A DNA stretch of 64,000 bases. It comes from Podarcis pityusensis. Taxonomy: Eukaryota. Location of the stretch: assembly GCA_964106645.2 (NCBI GenBank), contig OZ067044.1. One strand, given 5' to 3'. The translations under genes were made by a program, and so were the position numbers. Each line of letters begins with the position of its first letter. Within the stretch, counting starts at the first letter, position 1. Shown one piece after another: positions 4,736-43,859 of this stretch. The notes beneath the pieces were generated by a model. That model was given only the letters and a program-made list of their open reading frames with translations, ran no database searches and was not told where the DNA came from.

Positions 4736-9382
<4,647 letters not shown>

Positions 9383-14772: not shown

Positions 14773-14958
<186 letters not shown>

Positions 14959-16215
14959 CTGCTAGCATCTCTTTGCTGTCTGTTACAGCTTAACGTTGTG
15001 AAATATATATGTAATTCGTTTAAAAATATAGCACTAATGTGGAATACAGCCTTTTTCAATCTTCCATATATAACATCAAAATGCTTCACAAAATCTCATT
15101 CAATGTTGTAAATGTGCATACCATTTATTACAAATGGTATTTATTTTAGATCCTAGGTCCAAAAAGCATCTTCCCAACAGAGCTATTTATGTACAAAAAA
15201 AAAAAAATCTTTCACTGAAGTTTTAACAGCGCTGGCAGCTGTTACAAAAAAATCTGCTGAAAAGCACTTGCTATTTTATGTTCACTTTAATGATTTTTAT
15301 TAAACTTAAACTCCTACAAAAAACAAAACATCAAGCTGTGGGAAATATTACACGCTTGTGGGAATGTGGGGAGTGAGGGTCTATTCATCTTATATAATTT
15401 ATAGGTTAAATGTACAGTTTTCTTTTTGGAAAAGATGTAATATTGTTTTCATTTTTTAAAATAACTTATTTTATACATATTGCGCAATTGTAAATAATCT
15501 TGTATTTAACGTTCAACCCTGTATAAAAATAGATATTTTAATTGTAAAACTGTTTTGTCTAATGTTTTATTGGACCAAAGTTGTTGTTTCTTATGTGTAG
15601 TGTATAGGCAATTTTCTTTTAAAAGGCATGTATTTGATTTAGCTACTTGTTCCATCACCATAACTGTTAAGATTTGAGACTGAGTGGTATTGCATGCTAG
15701 CTCAGTTCAGGTTTTTTCCTACTGTGTGGTACCTAAATGATTGCAACATACGGTGCCAATCCACCAAGCACTGCTTCTGTACAGCATCCATTTATTCAGA
15801 GGAATTTGCATGAGTGTCCCTTTCAGTGTGGTTGCAGCAGTGCTTAATGGATTACACTTTGACTTCCTAGAGCCATTTGTCTTTTGCTATGCTGCTGTAA
15901 TGCCATGCCTATGACTTACTATGAAGAGTATTATGTTTAAAATCTTAAAAGATTATAAATCTGCTCTTACATTGTGGTCTCAAAACAAGCCTTTTAGTGT
16001 CCTGCTTCTCCCTTACAAATGCCTCTCAATGAAAAATTGTACATTGTCTATTTTAATATTTACCTATTAAAGCATATGTAAATAGTTGTAAATACAATGT
16101 TTAATAAATTCTATTGGTCATGCTAACAGATGGTTGAATCCTTGTGATGGTGAAATTTTCATTCTTGAAGTTTTATACACTTTGACAAAAATAAATCTTT
16201 GAAAGTTCCATGATA
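14959..16215 (+). other. ANKRD12: ANKRD12 3' UTR (AU-rich), candidate poly(A) signals AATAAA 16103-16108 and 16190-16195
   Basis: AT-rich sequence after the stop with no obvious repeats; TGTAAATA motifs at 15489, 16077, 16087; end inferred from hexamers only. Confidence 0.6.
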
Positions 16216-16454
16216 AGATTGTAGTTTTATATTCTGACCAATTCTCCATTTTTTGTGAAGAACTGACTAATAATATAATGTTCTTATTGTACTATTAGAA
16301 TGACTGCCATTATGACTGGGTATACGTTATGTGGAGGGAGGGATTCTGGATGTGCCTAGGGAGACGTGGATCCAAATCCTCAGTCACTATGTCTCAGCTT
16401 AAGCCTATCTGAGCTCCTGGGGGGAACTCTGTTAAGTTGTCCCAGGAGAGTATT

Positions 16455-16702
16455 TTTGTTGTTGTTGTTAAATCATTTTAATTAATTTTCCAATAAAAGA
16501 ACATCCAATTATCATATCAAATTATAATCCAATTAAAATAAAAAACTAAAATAAAAAGACCAAATTATCATCCAAATTATAATTATTAATTTTTCGGGAC
16601 TTCCCATAGCCTGGACCTTGAAGCATATCTCCAAGTCTCAATCCTGCTTCTCCTCGTTGTTTCCATATTTTCCACATTTCGATTTTAACGCTTTAACTCA
16701 GA
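16455..16702 (-). mobile_element. Probable 5'-truncated LINE (L1-like) 3' end
   Basis: Flanked by AGAGTATT direct repeats (16447-16454, 16703-16710); T/TTG-rich left end equals an A-rich tail on minus strand. Confidence 0.45.
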
Positions 16703-18251
16703 AGAGTATTAAAATACATTGTCCTCTGTGTCCTATCCCTGTTGGTGATGGTCAGACCACTCCACTATAAGGGAGTTTGCTCATGCTAAATTTGTCAAAA
16801 AGTTTAGTGTTTTATTTTCCCTAGTGTGAATGAATAACAAACACAAAATTAACCTTCCTTTGTAAGGTTAACAAGAACATTGAGAAACCCTAGTGACTTT
16901 GGGTGGGAGGAGGTGAAGAGGGGCAATTTTTGCTGTCTCTGATATGTCTCCCAAATTGGAGGCTCTTTGCCATCTACTCAAGGGAAGCTCATGAAAACTG
17001 AGTCCATCCCTGTCTGCATAGACTCTTTCATCTACAGAAATGTGTCCCTTAGTCATGCCAAAAGTGTGACTAATGTTTCAAGAGTGTGACACAGAGAATG
17101 TTGGAAATCGTTAGATAGATGGATTAAGAACATAAAAAGAGCCTTGTTGAACTAGATTGAGATCCATCTCACACAGCGTCCTGTTTTCAAGTATGGCCAA
17201 CCAGATCCCTCTGTGAAGCCTTCCTTATTCTTTGTCTCTGGCACTGTCTATTCCAAAGACAGAATAACTCCAAACAAGGACTTCAATTTGGCTGCTATGC
17301 TGATTGCTGTTGATAGCTATGTGATGAACTACTATTTCTTGCTATTTTTGTTTTAAACTATTTAATCAAAGTACTTTCTAAGCAGTGTAGAAATTGTAGA
17401 TGGAGCATAACTAAACTAATGTGGTCATTGTGCATTTTTGCTGCATGTAGAGGGGATCTGGTTGTAGCATCCAAGTGTATAAACATGTCAAAATTCATGT
17501 ATGTGGAATATTCACACAGAAAGTGTGTGATGCTTGTATTAATTCAGACACAGGATGCTTGTATTAATTCAGAAGCTAACCCAGCAGAATAGGCACACAG
17601 ATTCTTCATTTTCCTATTGCTGATTAAAATGGGATAAGCACAGAAGCAGCAAAGTGGCACAAAGTTTCCCAGCGCGTTTTTGTGTTTTGGCACATTGTTT
17701 GCTCCCAGAGAAATGGTGTTTGGAGTATACACGCCACAGGCAGAACACTAAGCTGGAATTTCGCTAGGAACTTCTGTTTCCCATGGACAGTATTCAACTA
17801 TCATGTCCTATCAGCACAAGAATTCCTGCTTCCACAACAGGACTTTCCACCTTCTCCCCACACTTTCCCTGAACCTTCCCTATATCTGCTCCATAGAGTT
17901 GGGGGGACTCCTAGAACAAATTGGGAGTGAAATGAAGGTAGGAGAGGGAGAAAACATTCTGTGGCACAAGCAGAAATCCTTGCACTTAAAGGATGTTCAC
18001 ATAGTACTACATTGGACACAACTCTACATGTTTATTCACCACGCGGATGTTCTTGACGTTCAGGTTTGAAAAGGATGTTGTTGCTGTTTAGAGAGTATGA
18101 TGGGCCAATAATTGCACACTGCTAGCTCTCTGGTTAAGCACCATATAATATTCTATATAGTTCCTTGGGACATCGCTCTAAAGTAAGGAATGTAAACAGT
18201 TCCCTGGGGCATCCAACATCAAATTTCAAGAGGCACCATCATGCACATTCT

Positions 18252-18273
18252 TGTGTGTGTGTGTGTGTGTGTA

Positions 18274-18318
<45 letters not shown>
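18252..18318. repeat. Compound (TG)n(TA)n microsatellite
   Basis: Direct reading. Confidence 0.95.
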
Positions 18319-18320
<2 letters not shown>

Positions 18321-20404
18321 CCTCCCTTTCCCTCATAGCTTGGGAGGGAAGGAGTTTAGTGCAGTTGTGCCACCATGCTTAAAATGCACATGTGGAGCTT
18401 GGAATCCACAAGAAAATAATAGACACTGCCCCGCCTCTCCTCTTCAGTCACACAAGCAAGTAAAGCAGCATTTGATAAGAAGAGGTTGGGTGGACAGGGC
18501 TTTAGTAGCAGCTGGTGAAAGCTATAGTAGAAGCTGCCCAGTCTCAATAATGGAGAAAACCTAGCCAGCAGACTAAAAGGATACTGCTACAAAGGACTGT
18601 GTGGCAAACTTGTTCAAAGCTAGCAAACCAGGTATTCTTTTTCTTTTTATCTCTCCCCATAGACACGTGTGTGTTTAATACCTTTACGGCAGGCAGAATT
18701 CAGCAGCTTCACTTGCTGAATTTTTGCCTCCCATGTTAAAAGAAAGGCCTAGCGCCCACTTATTTATCATTGTACAAATTACTCACTGGTGTTAGATGCA
18801 CTGAGCTCTAATAGAGACAATTATTTTACATCTAGGGAGCAAATATTGTCGGCCTGTTCCCATTTATTTTTATTTTGTCTTTAGGATATGGTTTTATTTA
18901 CACATATATGCAACCTGAGCATTGGATGGGAGGGGGTTGGTCTGTTCCCATTTACGTATATGAAACTTCTCTGTACATACGCTGCATTTTGTATGTGTAA
19001 ATATTAATAGGAATGTGAATTGGATTATCACCATTTCTTGTCATGATTCAACAAATGAAGCTTTCACTTATTTTCATGTTGGAAGAAACATCAGAATTTT
19101 ACAGCTGCTATATACATAGGAAATATACTGTGGTGGGGGAAAATGGTGGTAACCTCATCTTCATTTCAAGTTGTGTTCTAGGGTTCCTTTTCCTTCATAC
19201 TTCTGACACTTTCTTACCTGTCCCAGATGGGATTAAATAATCTACCCACCTCCCAGGGCACCCTCAGTATGACTCATGGGATGCTCTTCCTCTTATTTGC
19301 AGAGGGAAGAATTTCCCCCCTCTTATTTTCCTTTTGTAGTCTTTCTTAAATAGAAAGCCAAAATGTTTTTTCCCAGTGAATCTGTTTGACCCACTAGGAC
19401 TTCAATCCTGTGAACATTTGGGAGTAAGCCCCACTGAAAATGAGGAAATACTACAAAGGTTGATTGCCTCTTAACATGCTTTAACCAGCCACAAATGAAG
19501 TAAGATAATGTGTGAGAAAGCATTGGTTTTGCTCCCTCTTTAAAAGTATGGTTATGGATAAAATGGGACTTCTTGGAGTTTAATGGTGTTGCAGGGGCTA
19601 ATCACCTGGGTCTTAGTCTTGCAGTTGGCACTTCATGCTGTGCCGTATTATCTCTAAAAATCCACACACTTGATGTCGCTTAATGTTACAGGCCACTTAT
19701 TGACCATGTTTTAACCACTCTCTTGTAGAAAACCCATGAGAAGGCGGCAAATTTCTGTTCCACTCATCCATTATATGCTTATGAGTGAAGTGGGAATTTT
19801 AGTCCATGCTAACACTGATGGATAATCCCCATTAATAGCTTTTATGTTAGATAAAAGTTATGGTGGTAAACAATTTCTACCTGTAATTTGTAAATTTAAT
19901 TTGTAATTAATTAATTAATTGTAAATATTGAGGCAGAGATTAAATGACTTTCATATAATCGGATTAACAAAGGTGAGTCCTGAATAAGGATTGCATCTCA
20001 ATGGTAATTTTGGAACCACTGTCCTATACAGAAAGGATTGAAATACTTATGACTATGAATGAACCATGACCAAATCCATTAAATGGCAGGTCTCTTCAAC
20101 TTTCATACCCTTTCTTTCAACCTTTATTCTCTTCATTAATTTATAAAACTGGCTGGGAGCTGTACTGTACAACAGGAGACTGGTTGAATGTTGTATGAGC
20201 TTACTAATTATAAGAAACAGGGAGGGAGGCTGTTCCTGAAATAACTAGATCCAGATTACAGTGTAGCTGAAAGGAACAGAGATCTCACCATACTGAATTA
20301 CATAAGAAACCTAGTTACAGATAGGTAGCCGTGTTGGTCTGCCATAGTCAAAATAAAAAAAATCCTTCCAGTAGCACCTTTAAGACCAACTAAGTTAGTT
20401 CTTG

Positions 20405-20442
20405 GTATGAGCTTTCGTGTGCAAGCACACTTCTTCAGATAC
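20405..20442 (-). ncRNA. Minimal hammerhead ribozyme (PLE type), intact core
   Basis: Minus strand reads GUAU-CUGAAGA-A-GUGUGC-UU-GCACAC-GAAA-GC-UC-AUAC: CUGANGA and GAAA cores, 6-bp stem II, palindromic AGCU stem III, CUC cleavage triplet, GUAU/AUAC stem I. Confidence 0.8.
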
Positions 20443-20480
20443 GTATCTGAAGAAGTGTGCTTGCACACGAAAGCCCATAC
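20443..20480 (+). ncRNA. Minimal hammerhead ribozyme copy with mutated cleavage triplet (probably inactive)
   Basis: Same as the minus copy except GAAAGCCC instead of GAAAGCUC (position 20475), losing the conserved U of the NUH triplet. Confidence 0.7.
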
Positions 20481-21049
20481 CAAGAACTAACTTAGTTGGT
20501 CTTAAAGGTGCTACTGGAAGGATTTTTTTTATAAGAAACCTATGTAGCTTAACATGTTCTTGTCCATTTGCTAAGATCGGAAATGAGAGGTGTGTTATTG
20601 TGTACCTGTTGGCCAAAGAGACTACTGTCTTTTCTGTGCACAATTACTTAGGAATAAGGCACATTGACAGAACTGGAAATTACTTTTGAGCAAGCATGAA
20701 TAGGACTGCACTGCACATAAACTTCTTATTGTGGACCAGCCTATTATTTACATTCATGCCCAGATGGATCCTGGAGAAGTTATTTCTCCTTGAAATGCTA
20801 GTAAATGCCCAAATGAGTTGTGAGCTATAGTCTTTCTTAGACATATTACATTTTTTCACTTACTTTGTTCATCTCTACCCTGCTTGTCCTTGTTCTTTTG
20901 TTTAAGGTGAATTCTGGAATACCTTACATTTGGAATCTCTAGTTACTGGTGCCCATTGAAATTTGAAGGGTGGAAGGGAGACCAACAATAGGTAGAGCCA
21001 AACCCAGTGACAGGCAGAGCAAATTCTAATTTTGTTAAAGCGAATTATA

Positions 21050-21800
21050 CCACAGAGGAACGAACACCGCTTGGGCGTAAATTTAACGTTAATTCGGACG
21101 CCTATGCAATGCGCATGCGTGCTCCTGGCTCAAACCATCCCTTCGCTTCCACCCCCACTCATAAGACTACATCTCCCAAAATGCATCAAACAAAAAAAAG
21201 GGCAGGCGGGACTTTCTACCCGTTATATAAAAATAGGGAGAACAAGTGCGCAGGCGCAGGCTCCCTTCTCCTCTCCTCTTGGGTAGCTCGCTCCCTCAGC
21301 TACTACGACAGCCCCTCCCTGGGCGTCATGCGCGTGCGCTGCCTAATTCCGGCCTCTGCCCTCGATAGCCAAAGGGCTGCAAGAAACAGGCCGGAGAAGC
21401 GGGGGGGAGGAGGAGAGAAGGGCGCTCGCGCATGCGCCTCCAAACTGCCTCCTTCTGTTCCCTATACCCGACCTTGTAAGCGGGCGGCGAGGGGATGGGG
21501 CGCGGAGCGGGGCCCGGATGAGGCCGAAGAGGAGCCAAGCTCAGCACAGCCGTCCTGCCAGCGACGGGCTCCCCACCCACCCGCTCAGGTCAGTGCTGGG
21601 GCCATGCTCATGCGCGTGAGGGCTCCCCACCCGACCCGGGTTCTCCCTCACATCAGCTCCGTTGCCTCCGAGAAGGGGGTGAGGGAGGGAAATGTGGCCG
21701 AGCCTGTGGGAAAAGGGCATTAACTGAAGCGCTCTCTGCGGCGCGCATGCGCTAGTATCCCTGTGCAGCGCCCCCTAGCGCCTGGGGGCGCCTTGTGACT
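21050..21800 (+). promoter_or_regulatory. RALBP1: CpG-island promoter of RALBP1 with NRF1-type, ZNF143/THAP11-type and CTCF-type motifs
   Basis: The only non-transposon CpG-dense block seen in the window; GCGCATGCGC-like motifs at 21110, 21247, 21329, 21427, 21742; ACTACATCTCCCAAAATGCAT at 21166-21186; GCAGCGCCCCCTAGCG at 21765-21780. Confidence 0.85.
21400..21588 (+). other. RALBP1: Probable non-coding exon 1 of RALBP1 (start approximate)
   Basis: Strong donor CAG|GTCAGT at 21588/21589 inside the CpG island; exon 2 has an acceptor at 27269 upstream of the ATG, so a non-coding first exon is required. Confidence 0.6.
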
Positions 21801-22477
21801 GAGGCCCGGTTGGTTCTCAGGCTGCCACTCCCTTTTTCTCCTCAGGATTGCTGAATGGGGTGTTGGCATATTGGCACACCCTGCGGGTGGGATGAAAACG
21901 ATGCAAGCAACGTCGACATTATCAACCGCTTTGAGGTGTTTTTTTTGGGGGGGGGGTTGCACTCAAGCGGTGTATAAATTTTATGAAATAAATAAATACT
22001 CTGCAACAAGTGGTTCAGGTTGCAATCCTACGCACACTTAACATGTTAAAAAGGCCCTTTGCATGTAGTGGGGTTAACCTCTGAGTAAATGTGTGTTGTT
22101 CGAGTATCTTCCACTCACCATCATTCCCCCCACCCACTTTTGCCTGCTTAATGCTCCCAGTGACTACTTATGTGGACTCTCTTAATGCATAAACATGCCC
22201 CTTTGAGACTATGGCAGGATGGTTAAAAGATAACTAATTAATGATGTTAAACTGCAACCAGCCAGCCCCCATTCACAAGCATCCTGTTTGTAGGATCAAA
22301 TAAACTTATGAAATGGGAACACAGTGGTAACTATTGTGATTCAGGATGCATTTATGTAATGGTTTTTCTTTTTGGGGGAGTAACTGTTGCAGTCTTCCAT
22401 GTACCCTTTCTTAGTTACTTAGATGTGCAAAAATACAGGGATTTTTTTTTTTTTAAAGGATTACAGAAGCTCATATA

Positions 22478-27321: not shown

Positions 27322-27565
27322 ATGACGGAGTGCTTCCTGCCTCCCACCAGCAGCCCCAGTGAGCACCGCAGAGTAGAGCATGGCGGGAGTCTTGCTCGGA
27401 CCCCGAGCTCTGAAGAAATCAGCCCAACAAAATTCCCTGGCTTATATCGAACTGGCGAGCCATCACCACCTCATGACAGCCTGCATGAGCCTCCAGATAT
27501 TGTGTCTGATGATGAGAAAGAACATGGGAAGAAGAAAGGAAAATTTAAAAAGAAGGAGAAAAGAA
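27322..27565 (+). CDS. RALBP1: RALBP1 first coding exon (exon starts 27269): MTECFLPPTSSPSEHRRVEH...KKKGKFKKKEKR
   Basis: Recognisable RLIP76 N-terminus; acceptor ttattgcag ending 27268; donor GTAGGT at 27566; phase 1. Confidence 0.97.
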
Positions 27566-30500
27566 GTAGGTAGTCCTTCTCTTCTTCCAATCTGTGTGCT
27601 ACTAGTGTGCTTTTTAGTATTTACGGTTTGCTTTTCATGACTCAATACTTGTGTGCATGTGTTTTAATGTACAGCACAATCACATCTTGTGCACAGTTAA
27701 CGAGTGTGATTTCAGTCTTGCGCAGTTGAAAGCAGGCCAGTTGAAATTGTGTGAATTAATTGCACACTTAAAGGCTCCTTTTGCACTGGGTTTTCCCAGT
27801 GTGGAAAGAGCTTTTAAGCTCTCCATCTTGCTTACCAGGCAAGTCCTGCTCAGTGTGCGAGTTCTGGGATGCTCTTGCAAGATCTTGTGGGAATGTGGAT
27901 GCCCCCATGAGATCTCACGAGACCACACGCTGAGCATGACTTTCCCGCTAAGCAAGGCAAAGAGCTCAAAAGCTCTTCCTTCCTTGGGTATAAGGTCCAC
28001 TTGGCACATTGGCTCGAGAAGGTAAGTATGGTCGCACAGGACAGTTTCAAGGGGGTGGGCTGAGTATATGTGCCATCTCCAGAGTCTAACCCTGTGCAAG
28101 ATGTGATTATACTGTAGCCCTTTATATAATTTATTCATTTAGTTATCAGTGTGTGTGGCACCACAAGTGTAAATGTATTTCATAAGTGTTACAGGGGTTT
28201 TTTTGTATGTAAATGTTTTCTAAGGCATAAGGTGCTATAAAATCTGTGCTAATTCTAATCAAATGTTTTGGTATGTGATGCCTTCGTATCCATCAGAGTC
28301 TTAAGATTATTTGTAAATCTGCTAAGGCTTTCATGACATCTAAAGGAGGACTATAAAAATATTTCCAAATTGCAGCAGTGACATCATGGCTGTGTATCGA
28401 CTATCATACCTCATAATTAACTGAGGTATGAACAAGCCTCATGGAGCCACCTCAGTCCTTCCCTATGATCCAGGAAGTAAACCTGGAATTCTCAGTTAAC
28501 CTATAGTTTCCTTATAGGTTTGTACTGGGAAACTATGGTTAACAAATTCCAAACAAACCAGGATATTAAACCAACTTTAAACAGTGCCTTAGTATTCCAT
28601 GCATGTTTGTAAGCATTAAGTGTAGTTTCCTGGTTTGGAAACAATGGGAAACCCTTGTTAATAGAAACTTGTTGACTTACTTGCCTGCTCATGCAAAGGG
28701 AGGGGCAAAACAGCTCTCTGCAAGTGTACGATACTCATTCATATCTTGGCTTCTTAAGCTAAAGAAAATTACAGTCTGAAGCTAATGCCATCACTTTAAA
28801 ACAGGTGGGGAACCATTTTCAGCCCAAGGGCTGAATCAGAAATTGGGCCACCCCTCCATGGGCCTCTTTTTAAGGTGGTTGGGGCAGATCAGCTTATTGG
28901 TTCTAAAAGCCCCCTTGAAGTTGTTCGTTTACAGGTGCAGTTTGGTATGAAACCTTGCTTGCAAATGGACATTTTTCTTTGGCATTTGCAGGTGCAAATG
29001 ATTAAACGATTAAATATTGCAAGGGGGAGATAGCAGCAATGCCTTTTCCCAGCCCTGTGCATGCTGTGGCCACTACTGCCATCCAACCTGTGTTTAATGT
29101 GTAGATAACTAAAGACTGATGAATCGATCTTCTGTTCATTTAAAATTGTTGACATTAATTTCTCCCTTTGGTTTCCGTTGTGACAGATTCATGTATTGTC
29201 TAGCTATCTGAAAATAAATTTATTGCAAAAAATGGCATTAGCAGTAAAATCTCCAAAGACAACTGTTTTCTAAGCCTTGTCAAAAAGTTCTGAAATTGCT
29301 TCTCTAATTGTATTGGGAGTTATGGCTTTTGGCATTTTTATCCACGTCCACTGTTTCAGCGCTAATTCTACTACATCTGTTCTCCTTCTACAAGTACCAT
29401 AGCTGTCAGAATGGCTGCTTGATAATACATTTTTTAGGGATTGCTAGTTCTCCATTTTTTGTATTTTGCAAGACACATTGGTTAATAAAAGTCTGAATTC
29501 TTTGAAAAGTTACATTTTATCTTGGTACCTTGATCTGTGGTGAACATTCTGTTCTGTACTGTGATGCTGTTATATTTTTGTGTATACAGAAGTAGCAGTA
29601 GGCATTCAGAAAAACTCAAGATGCTTAGCTTCAAATTATGGGTCTAATATTTCAATAGCTGTTTATTTATTAAATATTTTAAACAAATATGAGAGCCCAG
29701 AATTTCAGACTTCAACTGTGTGTTTTTCCTTCTTTTAAAAGTGGCAGCATTGTTTGCCTGCTGGTTTTTGAAGTAATGTGAAGAATTAGAGTTTCTTAGA
29801 GCAGAAGGCTCTGAATGTTTGCTTGGAAATAAATCCCACCATGTTCAGTGGCGCTTACTCCCAAGTAAGTGTGCATCCCTAGGTCATTTTGGATTTGATT
29901 TTTAGTGCAGGGCTGCAGCTGTTGAGTCAAGGCTTGGTTACTCTCAGTCCTAGGGCATAGCAGAAGGCAAGAGATAAAGAAAACTGATTTGTAGAAAGGA
30001 TTTGGGACATACAGTTGAGCTAAAGGAATGGGTTAAATAAAGATGTGATATAGTGGAATACTTGCTGAAAACCAGGGCCATTGGTCCAATCGGGGATCTT
30101 TTAATCTGGGGATGTTGGGTCAGGTCTTTACTGTACTGAGGCAGTTCCCAAATCTCATCTATAGTGAGACAATGGTAGGGTCTTCTCATAACAGAGAAGT
30201 TAAAAGTCAGAATTTGGGGTTTGTTAAATCCTTTTTTAAAAAAACCAAAGGCCGGAAAAACATGATTTTCTTCTTCATTGAGCATGTTTTTAAAAGGCTG
30301 TACCATGGCAATCTATTTATGGACCATATATTCTAGTTCCAAGTTGGTCCACATCTGTGGATACAGAGCTCTTACCCCCACTTTGGTGGCCTGACATTCA
30401 TGCTGGAATATCACTTCAGCGCTCTAGCACACTGGGTCTGCGTAACTCACCCAGGGCACCATTCACATAAAAACTACCATAAATATATCAAAATTTTCAA

Positions 30501-32421
30501 AAGTAGGGTCCACGGCTTGGCTTTTGAAAAACAGGGGGTCCACAGTACTTAGCTAATTGGGAACCAATGCTCTAGCAGGTTCTCCATCAAATTTAGTTCA
30601 GGTTTTTTTTAGCCATTTCCTCCTCTGTCTTAGCATATGTGCTGCAATAAGTGATGGGTGTGATTTAGATATTTATTTTCTTGTTCTTCCCTACAGGGTA
30701 GGCAGGGCTAGTTGCAGAAGAGGTGTAGCTTATTGGACTCCTGTGCATTTATTTCAGAGGCAGCAAAGTAAAGCACCTGATAATTTGCAGCAAAAGCTTT
30801 GTTTGTCTTATGGCTGTGGAATTGAACTCTCTTGTGCAGTTTATATAATCCAAATGGGCACATGTAGTTAGAGATTTGTCAGGATGATTGGGACAACTTT
30901 GCCCATGGAACTGAAAAGTAAGTTATTTCTTTTTAGAGGTTGTACATTAATTTTTTACATTGTAGAATATCTGGTTTGCCTAGAATATCTGGTCTAACCT
31001 TTTTATTCCAAGCAGTTAACTTAGTGGTTTGTGCAATGCAATCCACTTCTCATTGAAGTCAGTAGCAAAGCTCTCACTCATTTTAATGCAGCAGGATTGT
31101 ATTATTTGTATTTTTTGCAGGTTGATTTTCAGATGTGCTTGTAAAGATGTTGAACTGATGCCATGACAGTGTGTTATATTCACTGCAAAAATACATATAT
31201 TTTTGACATTCTAATTTTAATAATAATGATTCTTATAATTAATGTGTATGATGAAAATAACAAATGTACAAGTTCAAGAAGTTCTGACTAATTTTCTATA
31301 CTTTTTGCAAGTATGAACAACTGTGTTATAATGCTTCTTAAATAACAAATGAAAGTTCAAACCATTTATTAGTGGCAAATGTGTGTTGTTTGAATATTGT
31401 TTCTGATTGCAATGGTTATTAAATAATTTTATTCACTTTCATACAACTCTTCTTCCAAGGAACCCAGGGCAGGACAGTGTACATGCCCCACCTACACACA
31501 GACACACACTAATCCTTATAATAACTTTGTTGAGGTAGGTTAGGCTAAGATAGGCTTACCAGCCAAATGGCATCCATTAAATTTCCAAAGCTTAGCATGG
31601 ATTTGAATCTGAGTCTTCCTGCTCATATTCTGCTTCTTATCCGTGAGACCCTCCTGGTGGTAATAGAGACTAGCAATAGCTCTTCTACTCATCTTGTTTA
31701 ACAAACTCTTTTGTCACCATAATGAGCTTTATATATGCACTCATTCATAAATTATCACATATCGCTGTTTGCCTGTTGGCCATCTTAGAAAATGGTAACC
31801 AAACTGGAAAATTCATACAACAGGATGCAAGTGTCTACCCAAGTAAAATCACATAGGCCTGAATCATATACAAACTTCAAGATTCTCTGCACATTCTGTT
31901 TTTTTAGAAGAGTCTACAGCAGATCCTGGAATATTGCTAAAGGTTTAAGATAAGCAGATATGCGCCATTCATATCACTTTACAGCATCAGTTCTGTATTG
32001 ATTTTGATGTTACATTTTACTTTAGGAGGAAACGATGAAAAACATTAAGGTGCCAGTACTAAGTTTACTTACCAGGGAATAACTCCACTGAACACAATGG
32101 GATATTCAAGCCTTGGCTTAGGCTTTCATTGCAAGTTGGAGTTAAACTTCAAACTGTACATTTTTGCATATTGTTGTCAGCAGGTAATCAAGTGATTCTG
32201 CTTGTGTATGAAGCTTTCATACCAGAGTAATATTTTTAAAAATTCATGTACATTATTCAGGGGAAGAAAATACATCAGAATTGTCTCCAAGTCCTGCATA
32301 ATTCTGCAAATATGTGTATGTAGCACATTATTGCTGAGCATTTTTCTGCCTTTTGGCTTTTCTAGGTAGATTATGCGTTTGATATTTTCCCTCCTTCATG
32401 TCTTCCTTTTTCTCTTAACAG

Positions 32422-32880
32422 CGGAAGGCTATGCAGCCTTCCAGGAAGACAGCTCTGGGGATGAAGCTGAAAGCCCCTCCAAGTTAAAGCGCTCCAAAGG
32501 GATCCACGTTTTCAAGAAGCCAAGTTTCTCCAAAAAGAAGGAAAAAGATTTTAAGATAAAAGAAAAACCCAAAGATGAAAAACATAAAGAGGACAAGCAC
32601 AAGGAGGAAAAACATAAAGAGAAGAAATCTAAAGACTTGACAGCAGCGGATGTTGTGAAACAGTGGAAAGAGAAGAAGAAGAAGAAGAAACCAGCTCAAG
32701 AGGCAGAGATACCGCAGGTGGATATTCCCAGGCCTCGCCCTGTGTTTGGTATCCCTTTGGCAGATGCAGCAGAAAGGACCATGTTGTATGATGGCATCCG
32801 CCTGCCAGCAGTTTTCCGGGAATGTATAGATTACGTAGAGAAATATGGCATGAAATGCGAAGGCATCTACAGAGTTTCAG
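32422..32880 (+). CDS. RALBP1: RALBP1 coding exon (459 bp): EGYAAFQEDSSGDEAE...start of RhoGAP domain (EGIYRVS arginine finger)
   Basis: taacag acceptor, GTATAG donor; in frame. Confidence 0.97.
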
Positions 32881-35398
32881 GTATAGTGGCCCAACTAAAG
32901 GTAGCTTTCGTCTGCTTTGCCTCATGTCTTTTGACCCAAAGGGCATGGTGGGGCTCTCCACCTTCACATTGCCCAAAACTTCATGTGACTTTGTAAATGC
33001 CTGCAGCTTCCTAAAACCAAATATGTTTAGCTGCTGTTGAGTTTAGGCTAGCTCTAAATTTAAGGCTGGAAGGATTGCTGATAAGCAGGTATAATTGAAA
33101 AATGATTTACTCTGCTTATATATATTAAAGTTCAATAGGTTAAAGACACAATTCTATATACATCTACCATTTGTGTTCAGTGGTGCTTGCTCCTGGGTTA
33201 ATGTGCATTTTTTTTATCGAGTCCTTAAAATTTATAAATTGCTTGATTGTGGGGGTTTTTTAAACAAGTTACATATATTACCACTGCAATTAAGACTGCA
33301 AATTTTATGCCCAGTTTTCTAGAAGTAAGCCCTTTGAATTTGACTGGATTTCCTTTTCAATGAACACATAAGATTATGCCGTAAGTTAGCAAACCTAGTC
33401 TTTTGCGTTTGAGGGCACAGTGTCTTATCAGATCCATTAAAGTCATGCTTCCCTAGAGTGGCACTGATTTCCAAGCGGTTTCCTCAGCCATCTGCCACAA
33501 CCTGCTTGCTGAGTAGAGCAACTGAAAAAAACAACATGGTTCAGTCTTTGTGATAGAAAGAGAAAATTGGCACATGGCACTTCCCAACTGCATTCCTCAC
33601 AACGCTTGCTCTGGAGTAGTGACTTCAGTATGTATAATGGTATAGAGTGGTGTAAGTAGTTTGAGGACTGTGAGAATATAACCTAATCAGAGATGTTAAG
33701 AACCTTGCAGTTGTTTGCTATATATTTTTAATTATGTTGTGTAAAAGATTCAGTGCTAGCAAGTAAAATAGTGATTTGTCAAGTGGCATATGGTGGGGAG
33801 AGAACATATTCTTCAGCTGTTTTTCCCTCCTACACTTTCATTTTGACTTTCTTCCAAATGGAATTTATACACAAAGTCCTCATTAGCTGGTATCTTGAAA
33901 AAACAGGGGAAATGTTGCAATAGCAGTTGAGGATTTAGCTTGGATTTGAAGAAAACACCCCGGTGGTAATGCCAAGATAATTAGCAGCCACGGTAGTTGT
34001 GTAACCCTTGATCCACATAAAAGTAACAATGATTCGAGTCATTTATTTAATTATACAGCTGTATTTTGAATTGTGAATGCCACCTGTGAGAGGCATCATG
34101 TCCGTGATCGAAATGCAATGCACGAGCTGTTTTGACAGGAACTGAAATGCAAATTCCAAGGCGGAATTTAAAGACAAAACTGCACAGGAAGTAAATATTT
34201 TGAAGAGATATTTAGTGCAAACATTGCACATTAGTGATACATAAATATGAAAGCATAGCCACACTTTTATTGACACTATGTCACTATTTCAATCAGAAGT
34301 ATAATTTTCTGATCTTGGAGGTTCATATCCTTTACTATGCCAGGCCGTGCTACAGTATGACCATGACAGTGTAAAGTGTCCTTCTCTGGGTAGTAGATAT
34401 GGATACTGCTTGGAATTTAAGCTTGAAAGGGAATTTGTGCAAGCATTGGAAAGTGTTTGGGCAAGTCTGAACAATGCAGAGAAGTAAAGTATTCTGATTA
34501 TAACTGACTTGTAAACAAGTCCATAAAAGTTGGTATCCTGCAACCTTGCTTTATTTTATTTTTACTAACCTGCCTCCTAGCAGACTAGTGGTGTGGATGG
34601 GTGTTTAAGCCTTCTGCATTTCTGTGCCTGTCCTTCCTCTGTGGCTAGCATGGAAACCGAACACGCAGGCAGAGGACAGCAGAGCAGTTTGTCTCTCCTC
34701 CACCGGTGTGCTCATTCATCAGCATAGAATTCCATGCACTTGCCTGCATGGAATTTTAGTGGCCTTTGATGACCAGGTGTGTTCTTAGAAATAAGGATTG
34801 AAAGTGGATAGTGTACAACACATCAGACACATCAGAACATGGGTGTGGTTTATTATTATTAAAAAAATTAAAGAGATGGTTGAAATTCCGAATCAAAAAG
34901 TCACCATCCAACCACTATCTCTGCTGTTTCTCCTCTACCTGCTTTTGCTGTAAATTGGAGACCCTGGATGCACCCACAAAATACACAAAACTATGGTTTA
35001 ACACCCAAGGATGAGCCTGAGTGACTTGTCAGGCTTGCATGCATCGTTCTCTTCCGTCATGGTCTTGAGGTACATTTTGGCAGAGTTTAGTTTCACAGAA
35101 TCCTGGATCGTTACTACATTTGAAACATGGATTCTAATTTAAAACAAACTGGCAAGTTTCATAACAAGCTGGTGTCAGACTGTGGGTTTGTTCTGCTTGG
35201 ACTTGTTCTGGCTCATCCATGCCGTGCTAAACCATGCAGACGCAGCCTAGGGCTCCTTCCTGCCCTCTTCCATTGCACACACCCTTATCTGCAGTCAGCA
35301 TGCTGTAGTGTTATTTCTTGAGTTAAGAGCCCAGGGTGGTATTCAACAAGGTTTTCCTGAGAGCAGACCTATTGAAATTAATGAGCACAACTAAGGTA

Positions 35399-35806
35399 CA
35401 GTGGTGCCTCGCAAGACGAAAAGAATCCGTTCCGCGAGTCTCTTCGTCTTGCGGTTTTTTCGTCTTGCGAAGCAAGCCCATTAGCGGTTTAGCGGATTAG
35501 CGCTATTAGCGGCTTAGTGGCTTAACGGATCAGCTGTTAAGCGGCTTAGCGGATCAGCTGATGAGCGGCTTAGCGGATCAGCTGATAAGCAGTTTAGCGA
35601 CCAGCTGTTAAGCGGCTTAGCGGATCAGCTGATAAAGCGGCTTAGCGGCTTGGGAAAAAGGGGGGGGGGAGGAAAAAAACCCCGCAGGAACTCGCAAGAC
35701 ATTTTCGTCTTGCGAAGCAAGCCCATAAGAAATTCGTTTTGCGAAGCACCCTTTCGTCTAGCGGGTTTTCCGTCTTGCGAGGCATTCGTCTTGCGGGGCA
35801 CCACTG
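35399..35806. mobile_element. pogo/Tigger-like MITE with ~24-bp minisatellite (GCGGCTTAGCGGATCAGCTGTTAA)n
   Basis: TA|CAGTGGTGCCTCGCAAGACGAA ... TTCGTCTTGCGGGGCACCACTG|TA; many internal TTCGTCTTGCG motifs; CpGs intact. Confidence 0.88.
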
Positions 35807-35976
35807 TAGGTTCATTAATTTCAGTGGGTCTGCTATGAATAAAACTTACTTGAGTACTTCCCCCAGTGTTTTGTGACTTTGCAAAATGAAGATAGTGCTT
35901 TACATGTGTGATTGCTCTATTTTTGTTTGTTTTTGGAATTATTTTGTGAAATCATTTTTTTTCTCTCTTTTTTTAG

Positions 35977-36326
35977 GAATTAAATCAAAGGTGGATGAGC
36001 TAAAAGCAGCATATGACCGAGAAGAATCCCCCAACCTGGAGGAGTATGAGCCTAACACTGTAGCCAGCTTGTTGAAACAGTATCTGCGTGAACTTCCTGA
36101 GAACTTGCTTACCAAAGAGCTCATGCCTCGCTTTGAAGATGCTTGTGGGAAGAGCCTGGAGGTTGAGAAATTGCAGGAGTGCCAGCGTCTCCTGAAAGAA
36201 CTACCAGAGTGTAACTATCTCCTAATTTCTTGGCTGATTGTGCACATGGACCATGTAATTGCAAAGGAACTAGAAACAAAAATGAATATACAGAACATTT
36301 CCATAGTACTCAGCCCAACTGTTCAG
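35977..36326 (+). CDS. RALBP1: RALBP1 coding exon (350 bp), RhoGAP core: IKSKVDELKAAYDREE...NISIVLSPTVQ
   Basis: ttttag acceptor, GTATGC donor; ASLLKQYLRELPE RhoGAP motif. Confidence 0.97.
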
Positions 36327-36357
36327 GTATGCATAATAGGCTCTCTATTTCCCTACT

Positions 36358-36403
36358 TCTCTCTCTCTCTCTCTCTCTCTATGTATATATATATATATAT
36401 ATA
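36358..36403. repeat. Compound (CT)n(TA)n microsatellite just downstream of a RALBP1 donor
   Basis: Direct reading. Confidence 0.9.
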
Positions 36404-39400
36404 TCAGTGGTTTTCAGACTTATTTCTCTGGGCCAATTTCAGAATAATAATTTGCTCTTGCCACACTGAATTTTTAAGTGATAAGAAATACATTGGGACA
36501 CAAAAAGAAGCAACAACTAGCAGGGCTTCATTTTGAAAAGATCTATCCATATTCTGCAAATAAATATATATATTCTGATGCTATACTATACTATACTACA
36601 GTGGAATGTTTAGATGTTTATTTGATTGTCTTTGAATCTTCCTGCCACACTTGCTATCCTTACCTGCCACACCAACATGGCATGCCACACTCTTTGAGAA
36701 CCACTGTGCTCTCTATATCCCTGCCTACATCCATATGTTGCTGAAGGTAAGCAGAGTTGGGATCTGCGTAGGACACATATAGAAGCTGTTTATAGAGGAA
36801 GGAGGGGATGTAAATGTAATTAATTGTGCACCAAGCTATCATTTATAGTTGGTTGGGACCAACAAATCAAACTTAATGACCTTGTGATAGTACCCAGTCA
36901 CCCTCTTACATAATCCAGACCAGTGTGCAACTATGGGTACCTGCAGAGCCCATAGTTCCAGATGGTGTTCAGGCAAGGGAGCCTTGTTAGACACTCCTAA
37001 ACTGGGACTGTGTTAGTTCTCTTTGTGTCCTCCTCCCCAGCCTCCCAAGGTCTAGAACAGAATGGATATTTGTTTTGGTTGAGGGTTTATTTGACATACC
37101 CTACAGTTATACATAATTTACCATTCTTCCTGCAATGTTTTAATGGCCCTCATTCATTGCTTCTGTTGTCTCAATTAGCATTGCAGGGAAAGAAAATTAT
37201 GCAAACGAAACCCAGCTTTACCAAGCAGCAGCAGTTTTTGAGATTTTGAAGCTTAAAACAGCCATCCTTTCTTTGATATATTTAGTAATGTCTTTACAAT
37301 CTTGGATAAGATTGCCGCTGTCTTTGGCATCCCAACTGGTTGGCATTTTTAAGCCTTTGGCCATGCAGGCATGAGAAAGGGTTGCAGAAAATATACTTTC
37401 TAGGTATTAGGTCCCATTGAACATAGTGAACTAACTTTTGAGTACACAAGGGCTACGCTGTTAGTCATATGATAAGTTACATATATCAGTATAAAAGCAC
37501 TAGAACCTGGACTTTTGCTAGGTACTGAGGGCTTAACCACCTGCTACCTTCACATCTCCAAATGTAGATCACATATGTTGATCTCCTTCCAGAATGAGTA
37601 ATCACAGTAATCTCATTTTAATTTTATTATTGAATAATGATGCTGTCAAACCAGTTGTTCAAATGCTAAACAAGATATTCCAGTTGAAACTCCTTTTGTG
37701 CAATGTATCAACTAAAGTCAAGACAAAAATCAAATCATTTGATAGTGTTATACTTTTTGTTGTTTAAATTTATTCCATTATATCTTTGAATTTCAGTTAT
37801 TCCCAGTTGAGAATTGAAGTCTAGGTAATATTTGTTTTTTAATCTCACTGCCATTTTTATGTAATCCAATGAGAGAGTGAAGCTTTTTGGGCATGTGGAT
37901 TAGGTAATGTTCTTTGACGTCTTTGCTTTGCTCCATCTCCCTTCTTAGCAGCCAAAGTAAAATGAAAGCAACATGGTATTACCCTGTTATATCTTGTTAT
38001 ATATGTAGGATTAAGTTCAGTTAAAGTCATATATTCCTAGACTCCAGATTTTTTCTGGAAACTAATGTGACAGCTAGATTCCAAAACAAATCAGTTTTCA
38101 AGGCCATGAACAGTAGTATCTCTTCTCAGTGTATACTTCCTTGTGTTTTTTAAAATGACTGACTGATAAAAAATATTTCATGCTTTGAATATTCTTATTA
38201 TAGGTGGAGAGTTAAACAGGCATTTTTTTTAAATGTTGCAGGTATTCAAAGTACAATGTAAAGACTTCATAGAAAGGATCTCATTATATCAACGCTTTAA
38301 CCCAGCTGGAGATTCTGGAATTGACAGTATAAAATTTTAGCTAATTTTTTGCTTTCTAAGAGTTCTGACATTTTGGGATTGCAAGATATAAAGTTAACAC
38401 TTCGTTTGGGATCCATTTCCCAGTGCTTAGACTAACAAAGAAGGCTATAACAGCACAGGGTCTTTATTAAAAAACCTGCTCTTGCCTAGTCAATTTTATG
38501 AAGTTTGTGGGAACAGACTGGATGGATATCTCTGGTTCTCTGTTATGTAAGAACATCAAACTGGAGCATTAGGATTAGGCCGTCAGAAGTGCATGTTTGA
38601 CATGTCACCTTCATAATCCATTTATATTAAAATGTTGAATAATAGTATTGCTGTTATTTTACACTTCCAAAGCTCCTAAGATTTTCTAAGCCTATATGTG
38701 TATTAAAGATAAGGCAGCCTCTGCCTGCAGACACAACCTCTCATATACATCTCATAAAAGGAATGGGAAAGGGAGAAGTAAGCAAGCATTGGAGCAGCTG
38801 TTCCTTCTCTGATCAATGAATTAATCGTCTGTTTGCCATGGTGTTCTTCCTGGGAGGCAGAGGGTGCAGCCTCTCATTAGTAGAGGCCAGAATCTTCTTC
38901 CCTTTTGTTTTGTAGTACTAGAGCAACTGGTGTTACAATGCAGTTGGTATTGCCTACGTAAATAAGAGAAGTCCAATGGTGCTGTTTTATTGTAAAGCCA
39001 AATCATGGTAAAAAGAACAAAGGAAAGATTGTCAGAAAGGTTTTTGCAGCTTCCCTTTGTGGATTCTTCTACTGTTCTAGAACTACCTGTCATTTAGTCC
39101 ATCCTTGGCCCCTTCTCAGAACCCCTCCCATATCAGGCTAGTGGAGATGAACTCAAATATTGCTTTCAGATCATGTTGCACTGGAAGAAAATGTACTGCT
39201 ATTGCAGAGCAGAACACTCCACATTACTCTTAAAGGCAGGTCAAGGCAAAAGTTTAAAGGAAAAAGTAAAATAAAACTGTAAGATCATTTGCTCAGCCTT
39301 TCCTGGATAAAAATTTCTCCTTGCCTGAAGGTGGCAAGTGGTCAGACCCCAACGTTTAAACAAAAAACACATTTACCAGATTCCTTTGGAGCCTTTACAG

Positions 39401-39797
39401 TTACGGAGTTAACAAACAGTAGCAGCAGCCTGGAGTTGTTATTAAAGCCAGTTTGGAACTTAATTCTTATTTGCTGATGGTTACAATTGACATAAATGAG
39501 TAACTTGTTTAGGATCAAAGAGTCGGCCATTACATTTCCGCCCAGATAATTGTGTGATTTTTTTTAAGGGGAAACTACGCAATTTTAACACAATTACATT
39601 AGATTTTAACATGATTACATTTCAACAGCTAATTATTTTTAAACATGATCTCTGCGTCTTTAGCCTGTTCAGGAAGTTACAGGAAGGAATATCTTAGGTC
39701 TGTTAGAATTATTTAGCATCTATGCTGTGGATGTTTGCAGACCAAGTGATTAGAGAGGAAGGTCAAAAGTAGTAATTTGACTGTTACGTCTTTTCAG

Positions 39798-39959
39798 ATC
39801 AGCAACCGTGTCTTGTATGTGTTTTTCACACATGTTCAAGAGTTCTTTGGAAATGTGATTCTGAAACGGGTGACAAAGCCTCTACGCTGGTCTAACATGG
39901 CAACAATGCCAGCATTGCCTGAAACACAGGAAAGCATCAAAGAAGAAATTAGAAGACAG
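39798..39959 (+). CDS. RALBP1: RALBP1 coding exon (162 bp): ISNRVLYVFFTHVQE...IKEEIRRQ
   Basis: ttttcag acceptor, GTTGGT donor; in frame. Confidence 0.96.
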
Positions 39960-40548
39960 GTTGGTGCACTTATACTTTTCTTGGCGCTTTCAGTTGAATT
40001 TTTATATTGAAACAGGGCAAATTTCATACTGACCAGACAAATAATCACACAGGAGAAATTATCTTCATTTTATAAGAAATAAGTTTGGGTTTTAACATAG
40101 GATGTGATACATCTCAACTACAGAGTTGCTTCTCCTACTTCTTTAATAAAAGAGGTGGTGAAGAAGACTCCAGAATTTTTTGACTGGAAAGTAAGAACTA
40201 AAAATGAAGGAGCCTCAAGCTTCCCCTCCCATTGTAGACAATTGTGTGTTGGGGGGCAGGGGAATAACAGGGCAGGTTTACACCAGCTATCAACAGCTAC
40301 TACTCACAATGGCTATGTTCTGCCTCCACTATGCTTCTGAATGCTATTCTGGGACTCACAAGTGGGTAGACTACTATTGCATTCAGATCCTGGTTTTGGG
40401 CTTCCCATAGACATCTGGTTCGCCATTGTGATATCAGAATGCTGGATGGGCTGCTGGCCTGATCCAGCAGGCTCTTCTTATGTTCTTAAAAGTTTTTTTA
40501 AGCTTAGAAATTGAATAATATTGCTGAATATGGTGTGTGTTTTACTAG

Positions 40549-40785
<237 letters not shown>

Positions 40786-41699
40786 TAACATTGTCTTAAT
40801 CAAAATATCATGCTATCCCTGACAGGGGAGACAGAGCTGTTCTTCCTTTCTGCTATGGAGGCTTTTAACTAGTCTAGTGTGGGATTGTTTATAGTTCATA
40901 GTTCTGATGGATCAAAATGTCTCACAGCATATTACTTCTTTTCCCCATCCTTAAATAAGAGGCTCCCTTTGACCATTGCCGTCCAGCGTAGTTGTCCTTA
41001 CTTAACACAGCATCAGAGGCAGGGATTCAAGTTCCTTAAACACTGGGCACTGCTGCAAAGTGAATTCCAGGATCTCATTATTGGGATCCTTGGTACCCTA
41101 TCCTGTAATAATGAATGGCCTGGTGTACCAGCATGGTATCTGATAATGATAAAATTGTGTGTATTCCTGATATTTCACTTCTAAAGCGTGCTGAGTTTCT
41201 GTTGCAAAGGCATGGGGTAGAAATGTTGCACTAGATGACTGCTCTTCTCTTGGGACGCTTACAGTTTCTGGCTCTCAGTTTCACAGTTTGGTGTTTGAGC
41301 TTCTGACAAGGTTACCTTTCAGACTTTTGTTGTAATTGCCTTGGGCTTTATTGGCCGATGCCTTTTGTGTGGTTAATCACGATATCTTCAGGTATGTGAA
41401 AATGTCCGCTTGCCACAGTGCATAAATCAACTGATCTGTCTGGTGGGGGAACCCACAGTCTGCTTGTTCACAGAGAATCGAAAGCAGCTGCACAGATTTA
41501 ACCGCCATCTGTCCTAGAAGGGAAAGCAAGTGATTAACCTGACCCACTAATGCTACTTTAGGAAGTTTGAATAACTTCAGATATTTTCTCAGTATAATAA
41601 CAGCACAAAAACCTCTGTGAGCTCCTGTTTAGATACAATTTCATTTAACCATATGGCTATGTTTGGCAGTGGCCATTAATCAAGATTTTTTCAATGTAG

Positions 41700-41807
41700 G
41701 AGTGTGAAACAAAGATTGCACGAGAGATTGCCAGCCTTTCAAAGGAGGATGTTTCCAAAGAGGAAATGAATGAGAATGAAGAAGTTATTAATATTCTGCT
41801 CGCTCAG
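41700..41807 (+). CDS. RALBP1: RALBP1 coding exon (108 bp): ECETKIAREIASLSKEDVSKEEMNENEEVINILLAQ
   Basis: atgtag acceptor, GTAATT donor; in frame. Confidence 0.96.
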
Positions 41808-42002
41808 GTAATTTCTGATGTTGAATGCACTATTTTTTATTTTTCTTCCTCTTCCTCTTCTTCTTCTTCCCCTTTTCACTATTCATTAAGGTAACATTAA
41901 ACTGTTGCCAAACACACTTGGAGAGAAACGGACATTCATATTTGAAAGAATTCTTTGATACTTTAAGAATTCTTTGTTACTTTAATGAAACTATAATTTA
42001 TA

Positions 42003-42254
42003 CAGTGAGGGGGGAAAGTATTTGATCCCCTGCTAAATTTGCCCATTTGCCAAAGAATCAAATGCTTATTTCACTCTTTATAATGCATATCAATCTCTGA
42101 CTTTTGTCTTCTGGGTTTCTGGGGGTTTTCCTGTTGTTATTCTGTCTCTCACAGCTACAATCAACCTACCATTAAAATTGTGGACTGGTCATTTCTTTGT
42201 CAGAGGGCAAACGGGCAAATTTAGCAGGGGATCAAATACTTTCCCCCCTCACTG
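42003..42254. mobile_element. Tc1-like (IR/DR-type) deletion derivative
   Basis: 49-bp TIR CAGTGAGGGGGGAAAGTATTTGATCCCCTGCTAAATTTGCCC(A/G)TTTGCC with one mismatch, TA duplication; inner direct-repeat-like ATCAAATGCTTATTTCACTC at ~42057. Confidence 0.9.
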
Positions 42255-43300: not shown

Positions 43301-43422
43301 GAGAACGAGATTTTGACAGAACAAGAAGAGCTGCTGGCAATGGAGCAGTTTCTGCGCAGACAAATTGCCACAGAAAAAGAGGAAATAGATCGCCTCCAAG
43401 CAGAAATAGCAGAAATTCAAAG
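43301..43422 (+). CDS. RALBP1: RALBP1 coding exon (122 bp): ENEILTEQEELLAMEQFLRRQIATEKEEIDRLQAEIAEIQ
   Basis: ttttgcag acceptor, GTAACA donor; phase 2 matches next exon. Confidence 0.96.
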
Positions 43423-43859
43423 GTAACAACCTCTCTGGAATCAAGCTTTCTGAATTCTAAAATAATATTTTTAAAGCAATAAGCTCGTACTGGACTGTGA
43501 TGGAAGGATAATTACATTGCACCCTTTGGCTTTTTTTGACTACATCATCCTAACACTACACTTTGGCTTGAATCTTAGTAAAATCCAGTAAACTTAATAG
43601 GTTGTTGAATTTTACCCTATTAACAGAAGTGGTTCTATGTTTTGGTGGTTCTGTAAGTAGCTTCTTGAAAAGTGTTCTAAGTGTAATATTTGAACGTTTA
43701 TGTTTAGTGACACTTCTCCATATACAGTATACCATACAGTAAACATCTATTTGTGCTCCAGATCATGTCCATTATGTGGCAGTTGATTAATGCTGTATAG
43801 CAATCTAGGCAAATAGTGAAGTAAGCTTTAAAAAAATCAAACGTGCTCATCTGTTTTAG

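What the first reader, a model, noticed from the sequence alone, without database searches (positions are those of the whole stretch)
16200..21050. TWSG1 is missing from the ANKRD12-(TWSG1)-RALBP1-PPP4R1 block
Established: in human the order is ANKRD12, TWSG1, RALBP1 (same strand), then PPP4R1 (opposite). Seen: ANKRD12, RALBP1 and PPP4R1 keep this order and orientation. Only ~5 kb, gap-free and repeat-rich, separates the ANKRD12 3' end from the RALBP1 CpG island. It has no second CpG island, and I found no intact cysteine-rich TWSG1 exon (CNKALCASDVSKC, CCKECMLC, WFHNACCEC) in the window. Inference: this BMP/chordin modulator was lost or relocated in this lineage, possibly compensated by a paralog.
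Basis: partly seen in the sequence, partly recalled or inferred. Interest (0 to 1): 0.8.

Follow-up and report, generated by a model that had tools for sequence, protein, structure and literature searches.

The report
TWSG1 moved, not lost, in lizards
The BMP-control gene TWSG1 really is gone from its usual place in this wall-lizard genome, but wall lizards and worm lizards keep an intact copy on another chromosome and a scrap of its old tail-end DNA still marks the empty site, so this is a gene move rather than a gene loss.

Summary
The window is Podarcis (ANKRD12 99.6% to P. lilfordi). TWSG1 is truly absent between ANKRD12 and RALBP1, and an independent Zootoca assembly shows the same gap, so misassembly is excluded. 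The gene is not lost: five lacertid assemblies and the amphisbaenian Rhineura carry a full TWSG1 on a different chromosome from ANKRD12. It keeps its introns, CpG promoter, all 24 cysteines and dN/dS about 0.007, and groups with TWSG1 orthologues, not TWSG2-like paralogues. Hummingbird, leopard gecko and viper keep it in place. Window 19,814-20,632 holds single-copy DNA that also lies 5-10 kb downstream of the moved gene, so the block was most likely copied elsewhere and the old copy then deleted at about 19,110-19,810, near the lacertid-amphisbaenian split. Unexpected extra: the agamid Phrynocephalus also lacks TWSG1 here (decayed exon left behind), and leopard gecko has a recent second copy, so the gene may have moved repeatedly in squamates. 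I could not search this assembly itself for the moved copy. No paper on it was found; the scan had not noted it elsewhere.

The parts
4758..9358 (+). ANKRD12 large coding exon (identifies the genome as Podarcis)
   Evidence: 99% to P. muralis, 99.6% to P. lilfordi pieces
14773..16210 (+). ANKRD12 last exon: stop at 14,956-14,958, conserved 3' UTR, polyA signals at 16,103 and 16,190
   Evidence: aligns to bird, gecko, viper, agamid and Rhineura 3' UTRs
16699..19109 (+). Ancestral spacer that lay between ANKRD12 and the TWSG1 promoter (5' flank left behind)
   Evidence: colinear with Rhineura old site at 66-75%
18029..18250 (+). Single-copy element of that 5' flank; upstream of the TWSG1 promoter in gecko and Pogona
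   Evidence: profile hits only window, Zootoca, Rhineura old site, gecko L002 95,182-95,405, Pogona L008 3,051-3,283
19110..19813 (.). Interval holding the deletion junction where TWSG1 (promoter to 3' UTR) was removed; exact base not resolved
   Evidence: between last 5'-flank match and first 3'-flank match; inferred
19814..19870 (+). 3'-flank relic, piece 1 (weak)
   Evidence: 16.4 bits, E 0.001, to an element downstream of TWSG1 in Podarcis, Rhineura and gecko
19925..20004 (+). 3'-flank relic, piece 2
   Evidence: 73% to Rhineura L006 39,980-40,060, colinear
20070..20632 (+). 3'-flank relic, main piece (about 330 bp, split by the insert below)
   Evidence: 69-79% to DNA about 9 kb below the stop of the moved TWSG1 in P. 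muralis (L004 30,011-30,338) and Rhineura (L006 41,187-41,493); also upstream of the RALBP1 island in Phrynocephalus (L009 71,676-71,952); no other copy in 579 kb
20314..20530 (.). Later insertion: 217-bp palindromic repeat with hammerhead-like cores, 12-bp target-site duplication at 20,302-20,313 and 20,531-20,542; unrelated to the move
   Evidence: site empty in Zootoca, Rhineura, Phrynocephalus and the moved copies
21050..21900 (+). RALBP1 promoter CpG island (RALBP1's own, not a captured TWSG1 promoter)
   Evidence: GC 0.61, CpG o/e 0.73; matches the island after the relic in Phrynocephalus, not the TWSG1 promoter profile
27322..46321 (+). RALBP1 coding span
   Evidence: translations, RhoGAP hit, homologues named RalA-binding protein 1

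Best explanation
TWSG1 was moved by copy-then-delete. Step 1 (inferred from shown homology): a DNA block running from the TWSG1 CpG-island promoter to about 10 kb past its stop (24 kb in Podarcis today, 36 kb in Rhineura) was duplicated into a site 3-4 Mb from the end of another chromosome. Step 2 (inferred): the old copy was deleted from promoter through 3' UTR, joining the old 5' spacer to the far 3' flank at window 19,110-19,810, so the last stretch of flank now exists twice. Step 3 (shown at sequence level): the new copy is the working TWSG1, a secreted two-domain BMP/chordin binder with all 24 cysteines and the whole BMP-binding helix unchanged, under strong purifying selection. Timing (inferred): after the split from snakes and iguanians, close to the lacertid-amphisbaenian split, probably once in their common ancestor. 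The trigger is not shown; ectopic recombination or break repair into a subtelomeric region is the likeliest.
For: Absence at the old site in window and Zootoca; no TWSG1 call or profile hit in 10 kb after Rhineura ANKRD12. In place in hummingbird, leopard gecko, viper. TWSG1 vs ANKRD12 contig lengths differ in P. muralis (63.5/91.9 Mb), P. raffonei (61.4/92.5), P. lilfordi (59.1/89.6), L. agilis (56.7/86.6), Zootoca (59.6/88.8), Rhineura (91.9/323.6), but are equal in Vipera, Erythrolamprus and Gekko. Same intron positions and homologous promoter exclude a retrocopy. Relic present at old site and below the moved gene, single copy, colinear, same strand, and at the old site of an independent lineage. 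dN 0.008, dS 1.2 between Podarcis and Rhineura. Relic divergence rejects a long shared branch for the two new copies (2dlnL 13.3 for 0.10; 0.10 is the stem length seen). Both moved copies point towards the near chromosome end.
Against: The moved copy was not looked for in this very assembly. No neighbouring gene was reached at either new site, so a shared destination is not proven; the relic tree slightly prefers window+Podarcis-new over Podarcis-new+Rhineura-new (AU p 0.07 for the single-event tree; only 282 columns). Only 10 kb of the Rhineura old site was seen.
Confidence: 0.8

Rival explanations
1. Same copy-then-delete route, but it happened separately in lacertids and amphisbaenians (or one duplication was followed by gene conversion between old and new flanks).
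For: Relic quartet: 5 sites join the two new copies against 10 and 11 for the other pairings; best tree joins window with the Podarcis new copy. Agamids and a gecko show separate events, so the locus moves easily.
Against: Both new copies have the same block limits as far as seen (promoter to relic), both lie 3-4 Mb from a chromosome end in the same direction; the single-event tree is not rejected (p 0.07).
Confidence: 0.1
2. One old duplication before snakes, iguanians and lacertoids split, with snakes keeping the old copy and lacertoids and agamids keeping the new (hidden paralogy).
For: Phrynocephalus also lacks the old copy; the gene tree for Pogona, viper and lacertoids is unresolved (AU rejects none).
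Against: Relic divergence predicts a long internal branch that is not there. Pogona's TWSG1 carries the 5' element and not the 3' relic within 10 kb, with a tRNA-Ile island downstream, the reverse of the lacertoid copies.
Confidence: 0.05
3. TWSG1 is truly lost in this species or replaced by an ancient paralogue.
For: Absent from the window; the rest of this assembly could not be searched.
Against: Three Podarcis species, including the closest match P. lilfordi, and two other lacertid genera have an intact orthologue elsewhere; the gap is shared with Zootoca, which has the gene.
Confidence: 0.03
4. Assembly collapse or misjoin removed TWSG1 from the window.
Against: Zootoca is colinear at 88-96% across the whole interval into the RALBP1 island, with no N.
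Confidence: 0.01

Closest known systems
Vertebrate TWSG1 (Pfam Tsg_N PF23782 + Tsg PF04668; structure in PMC11167000)
   Same: The moved lacertid gene has both domains, 24 cysteines, the BMP-binding residues Lys28, Ala32, Ser33, Asp34, Val35, Lys37, Ile40, Glu42 named in that paper, and the same intron positions.
   Different: Sits on another chromosome; a few lacertoid-specific changes at otherwise constant positions (G to V in the N-domain loop; E to G, N to H, two residues before the C-domain cysteine, I to S in the C-domain), untested.
Gene relocation by segmental duplication and loss of the parent copy (duplicative transposition; from my own knowledge of the field)
   Same: Intron-containing copy with promoter at a new site, duplicated flank left at the old site, parent copy deleted or decayed.
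   Different: This instance was not found in the paper searches, and the same gene seems to have done it more than once within squamates.
Squamate-wide gene losses by segmental deletion (PMC13005343)
   Same: A gene missing from a conserved syntenic block through a clean deletion.
   Different: TWSG1 is not mentioned in that paper's main text; here the orthologue survives elsewhere and the change is limited to some squamate lineages.
TWSG2-like paralogues (Xenopus, newt, coelacanth)
   Same: Same Pfam families.
   Different: Separated from the lacertid gene by a fully supported long branch; not the source of the lacertid copy.

Membership tests
TWSG1 orthologue (for the moved lacertid gene) | Tsg_N and Tsg domains above Pfam cut-off, 24 cysteines | tested here: met
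TWSG1 orthologue (for the moved lacertid gene) | Groups with TWSG1, not TWSG2-like proteins, in species-tree position | tested here: met
   Lacertids + Rhineura + tegu form a clade (92/90); TWSG2-like split 100/100
TWSG1 orthologue (for the moved lacertid gene) | Purifying selection and intact BMP-binding helix | tested here: met
   dN/dS 0.007; helix identical to bird and turtle
TWSG1 orthologue (for the moved lacertid gene) | Expressed and binds BMP and chordin | not testable with these tools
True gene loss | No orthologue anywhere in the lineage's genomes | tested here: not met
   intact orthologue in five lacertid assemblies and Rhineura
True gene loss | No orthologue in this particular assembly | not testable with these tools
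   no whole-assembly search offered; findings look-up blank means nothing
Retroposed gene copy | Introns and parental promoter absent | tested here: not met
   all coding introns and the promoter island retained
Duplicative transposition with loss of parent | Ancestral site shown by outgroups | tested here: met
   bird, gecko, viper in place
Duplicative transposition with loss of parent | Flanking DNA present at both old and new site | tested here: met
   relic 19,814-20,632
Duplicative transposition with loss of parent | One shared destination in all descendants | tested here: inconclusive
   same block, same direction near a chromosome end, but no neighbour gene within 10 kb
Promoter capture (RALBP1 using the old TWSG1 promoter) | Window island homologous to the TWSG1 promoter | tested here: not met
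   best hit 3.5 bits on the wrong strand; island matches Phrynocephalus island after the relic

The most novel reading that the evidence does not exclude
TWSG1 is a repeatedly mobile developmental gene in squamates: it left the ANKRD12-RALBP1 block independently in lacertid/worm lizards and in agamids and was recently duplicated to another chromosome in leopard gecko, each time as an intact promoter-plus-gene unit landing within 3-8 Mb of a chromosome end. That would be a natural, replicated test of whether a BMP modulator needs its ancestral long-range enhancers.
Probability: 0.5. Interest if true: 0.5.

Novelty: new member of a known kind. Interest (0 to 1): 0.33.

Why it matters
A real loss of TWSG1 would have been striking, but it did not happen. 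What remains is a clean, apparently unreported gene move that (a) is a rare genomic character for lacertids plus amphisbaenians, testable in teiids, (b) shows how a synteny gap misleads loss screens, and (c) hints, through the agamid remnant and the gecko duplicate, that this small gene travels as a self-contained unit, which says its regulation may be mostly local.

Tried and rejected
Cysteine-rich six-frame scan of the window: only chance or repeat hits. Promoter capture by RALBP1: rejected. Retrocopy: rejected. Assembly collapse: rejected. Gecko second copy as the same event as the lacertid move: rejected, it is 97% identical to the in-place copy over 1,370 bp of promoter DNA and shares no upstream flank with lacertoid or Pogona loci. 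Shared breakpoint from 46-75 bp common to both new copies beyond the window match: dropped, since Phrynocephalus old site has it too. Gene tree to place Pogona: unresolved. A weak intron-2 profile hit in Zootoca (8 bits) was not confirmed in reverse. Search for full-length RALBP1 loci through one exon gave only short contigs; clusters that might be human were not opened. Two locus look-ups failed on isoform choice.
Full report
Identity and layout. The large ANKRD12 exon (4,758-9,358) is 99% identical to Podarcis muralis and 99.6% to P. lilfordi pieces, 97% to Lacerta and Zootoca, 88% to Rhineura. The window is a wall lizard. ANKRD12 ends with stop 14,956-14,958 and polyA signals at 16,103 and 16,190; a CpG island at 21,050-21,900 precedes RALBP1 (ATG 27,322); a PPP4R1-like exon lies on the minus strand near 53,100 (the PPP4R1 name is from memory). 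There are no N.

DNA profiles of the promoter, four coding exons and two conserved non-coding blocks, built from five squamates, find nothing in the interval, although the exon-2 profile detects a heavily decayed remnant in another lizard at 1e-24. The independent Zootoca assembly is colinear at 88-96% from the ANKRD12 UTR through the RALBP1 island and also has no TWSG1, which excludes a collapse. The interval is less repeat-rich than stated: most of 16,700-19,100 aligns to Rhineura.

The ancestral state. TWSG1 follows ANKRD12 directly in hummingbird (5.8 kb after the stop), leopard gecko and viper; contig lengths also agree for Gekko and Erythrolamprus.

The gene is elsewhere. The one large protein search (used because the claim rested on absence) gave a full-length query, and the word search then returned TWSG1 from P. 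muralis and Rhineura. Cluster members add P. raffonei, P. lilfordi, Lacerta agilis and Zootoca. In all six the TWSG1 contig differs from the ANKRD12 contig: 63.5 vs 91.9, 61.4 vs 92.5, 59.1 vs 89.6, 56.7 vs 86.6, 59.6 vs 88.8 and 91.9 vs 323.6 Mb. The P. muralis (L004) and Rhineura (L006) loci are colinear over the gene and flanks, keep every coding intron at the ancestral position and a promoter island homologous to those of gecko, viper and Pogona. The proteins have both Pfam domains, 24 cysteines and an unchanged BMP-binding helix including Ile40 (residues from PMC11167000); dN is 0.008 against dS 1.2 (exon by exon). In the protein tree they group with tegu inside TWSG1, far from TWSG2-like proteins. 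So the survivor is the orthologue, neither a retrocopy nor an ancient paralogue. I could not search this assembly itself; its having the moved copy is inferred from its closest relatives.

The scar. Window 20,070-20,313 and 20,543-20,632 match, colinearly and on the same strand, DNA about 9 kb below the stop codon of the moved gene in both P. muralis (69-75%) and Rhineura (77-79%); two weaker pieces at 19,925-20,004 and 19,814-19,870 extend the match in order. A profile of the main piece finds no other copy in 579 kb of fetched DNA. The same piece lies upstream of the RALBP1 island in the agamid Phrynocephalus, so it is ancestral DNA of this site. On the other side, 18,029-18,250 is an element that sits between ANKRD12 and the TWSG1 promoter in gecko. 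The window therefore joins the old 5' flank (to about 19,109) to the old far 3' flank (from about 19,814). DNA present at both old and new site means copy first, deletion afterwards; the order is inferred, the duplicated flank is shown. The RALBP1 island is RALBP1's own.

Timing. The three lacertoid copies of the relic are about equally distant (74-81%) and closer to each other than to Phrynocephalus (65-71%). An internal branch as long as the lacertid-amphisbaenian stem seen in the gene blocks (0.106) is rejected (2dlnL 13.3). The duplication thus falls near the lacertid-amphisbaenian split, not before the split from snakes and iguanians. With 282 columns this cannot separate one event just before the split from two just after; the best tree even leans to the latter. 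One event is preferred because both copies span the same block and lie 3-4 Mb from a chromosome end in the same direction.

Other squamates. Phrynocephalus has, after ANKRD12, a decayed TWSG1 exon 2 with frameshifts and stops (L009 68,731-69,146), then the relic, then the RALBP1 island, all within 10 kb. Pogona has an intact TWSG1 with the 5' element upstream, no ANKRD12 UTR in the 7.7 kb above its promoter, and a tRNA-Ile island rather than the relic downstream. This fits a separate agamid move but rests on one side from each of two genera; the gene tree does not decide. Leopard gecko has a second, intact-looking copy beside RXYLT1 on another chromosome, 97% identical to the in-place copy over the promoter.

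Comparison with what is known. Relocation by duplication and loss of the parent is a known kind of event (own knowledge). Seven paper searches found no account of it for TWSG1; a recent squamate gene-loss survey (PMC13005343) does not name the gene in its main text (supplements not held).

Limits and handling. For one tree, separately aligned genomic blocks were put side by side inside a script. Primate and possibly human entries in the hit lists were not followed.

Verdict. Observation confirmed; loss and paralogue compensation not supported; relocation by copy-then-delete well supported. Interest 0.33, most of it from the sign that the gene has moved more than once in squamates.

Noticed in passing
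L009:68731-69146, 71676-71952, 75251-75874 (Phrynocephalus forsythii): ANKRD12 is followed by a decayed TWSG1 exon 2, the same 3' relic and the RALBP1 island within 10 kb: agamids also lost the old copy. Whether this species has TWSG1 elsewhere was not checked.
   Followed up: partly
L008:3051-3283 and 32796-32890 (Pogona vitticeps): Intact TWSG1 with the ancestral 5' element upstream but a CpG island with an intron-bearing tRNA-Ile(TAT) gene downstream; probably a moved copy with different block limits.
   Followed up: partly
L005:9431-36473 (Eublepharis macularius): Second TWSG1 next to RXYLT1 on a different chromosome, 97% identical to the in-place copy over 1,370 bp of promoter DNA, exon 2 intact: a recent duplication (or an assembly duplicate; not tested).
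   Followed up: partly
window:20314-20530: 217-bp near-perfect palindromic insertion with a hammerhead-like core on both strands and a 12-bp target-site duplication; absent in Zootoca; related pieces occur in the gecko and P. muralis loci, so it is a mobile repeat. No Rfam or cleavage test was done.
   Followed up: partly
L004 exon 4 (18394-18660): Third-position GC of the moved gene is 0.79 in Podarcis against 0.52 in Rhineura and 0.38-0.45 in viper, Pogona and gecko, with a doubled branch length: likely GC-biased conversion near the chromosome end.
   Followed up: partly
P0197, P0305, P0311: Lacertid and Rhineura TWSG1 share changes at positions constant in other amniotes, several in the chordin-binding C-terminal domain; effect unknown.
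   Followed up: no
window:11105-11462, 12368-12471, 22475-22995, 35480-35648: GC-rich repeats with short tandem units; copies also flank the P. muralis TWSG1 locus. Look like lacertid transposon families.
   Followed up: no
L007:32400-35846 (Vipera latastei): A Gypsy-like LTR element with gag-pol-like sequence sits downstream of TWSG1 and mimics a CpG island; left as seen.
   Followed up: no
window:16455-16698: AT-rich insertion just after the ANKRD12 polyA site, absent in Zootoca and Rhineura.
   Followed up: no
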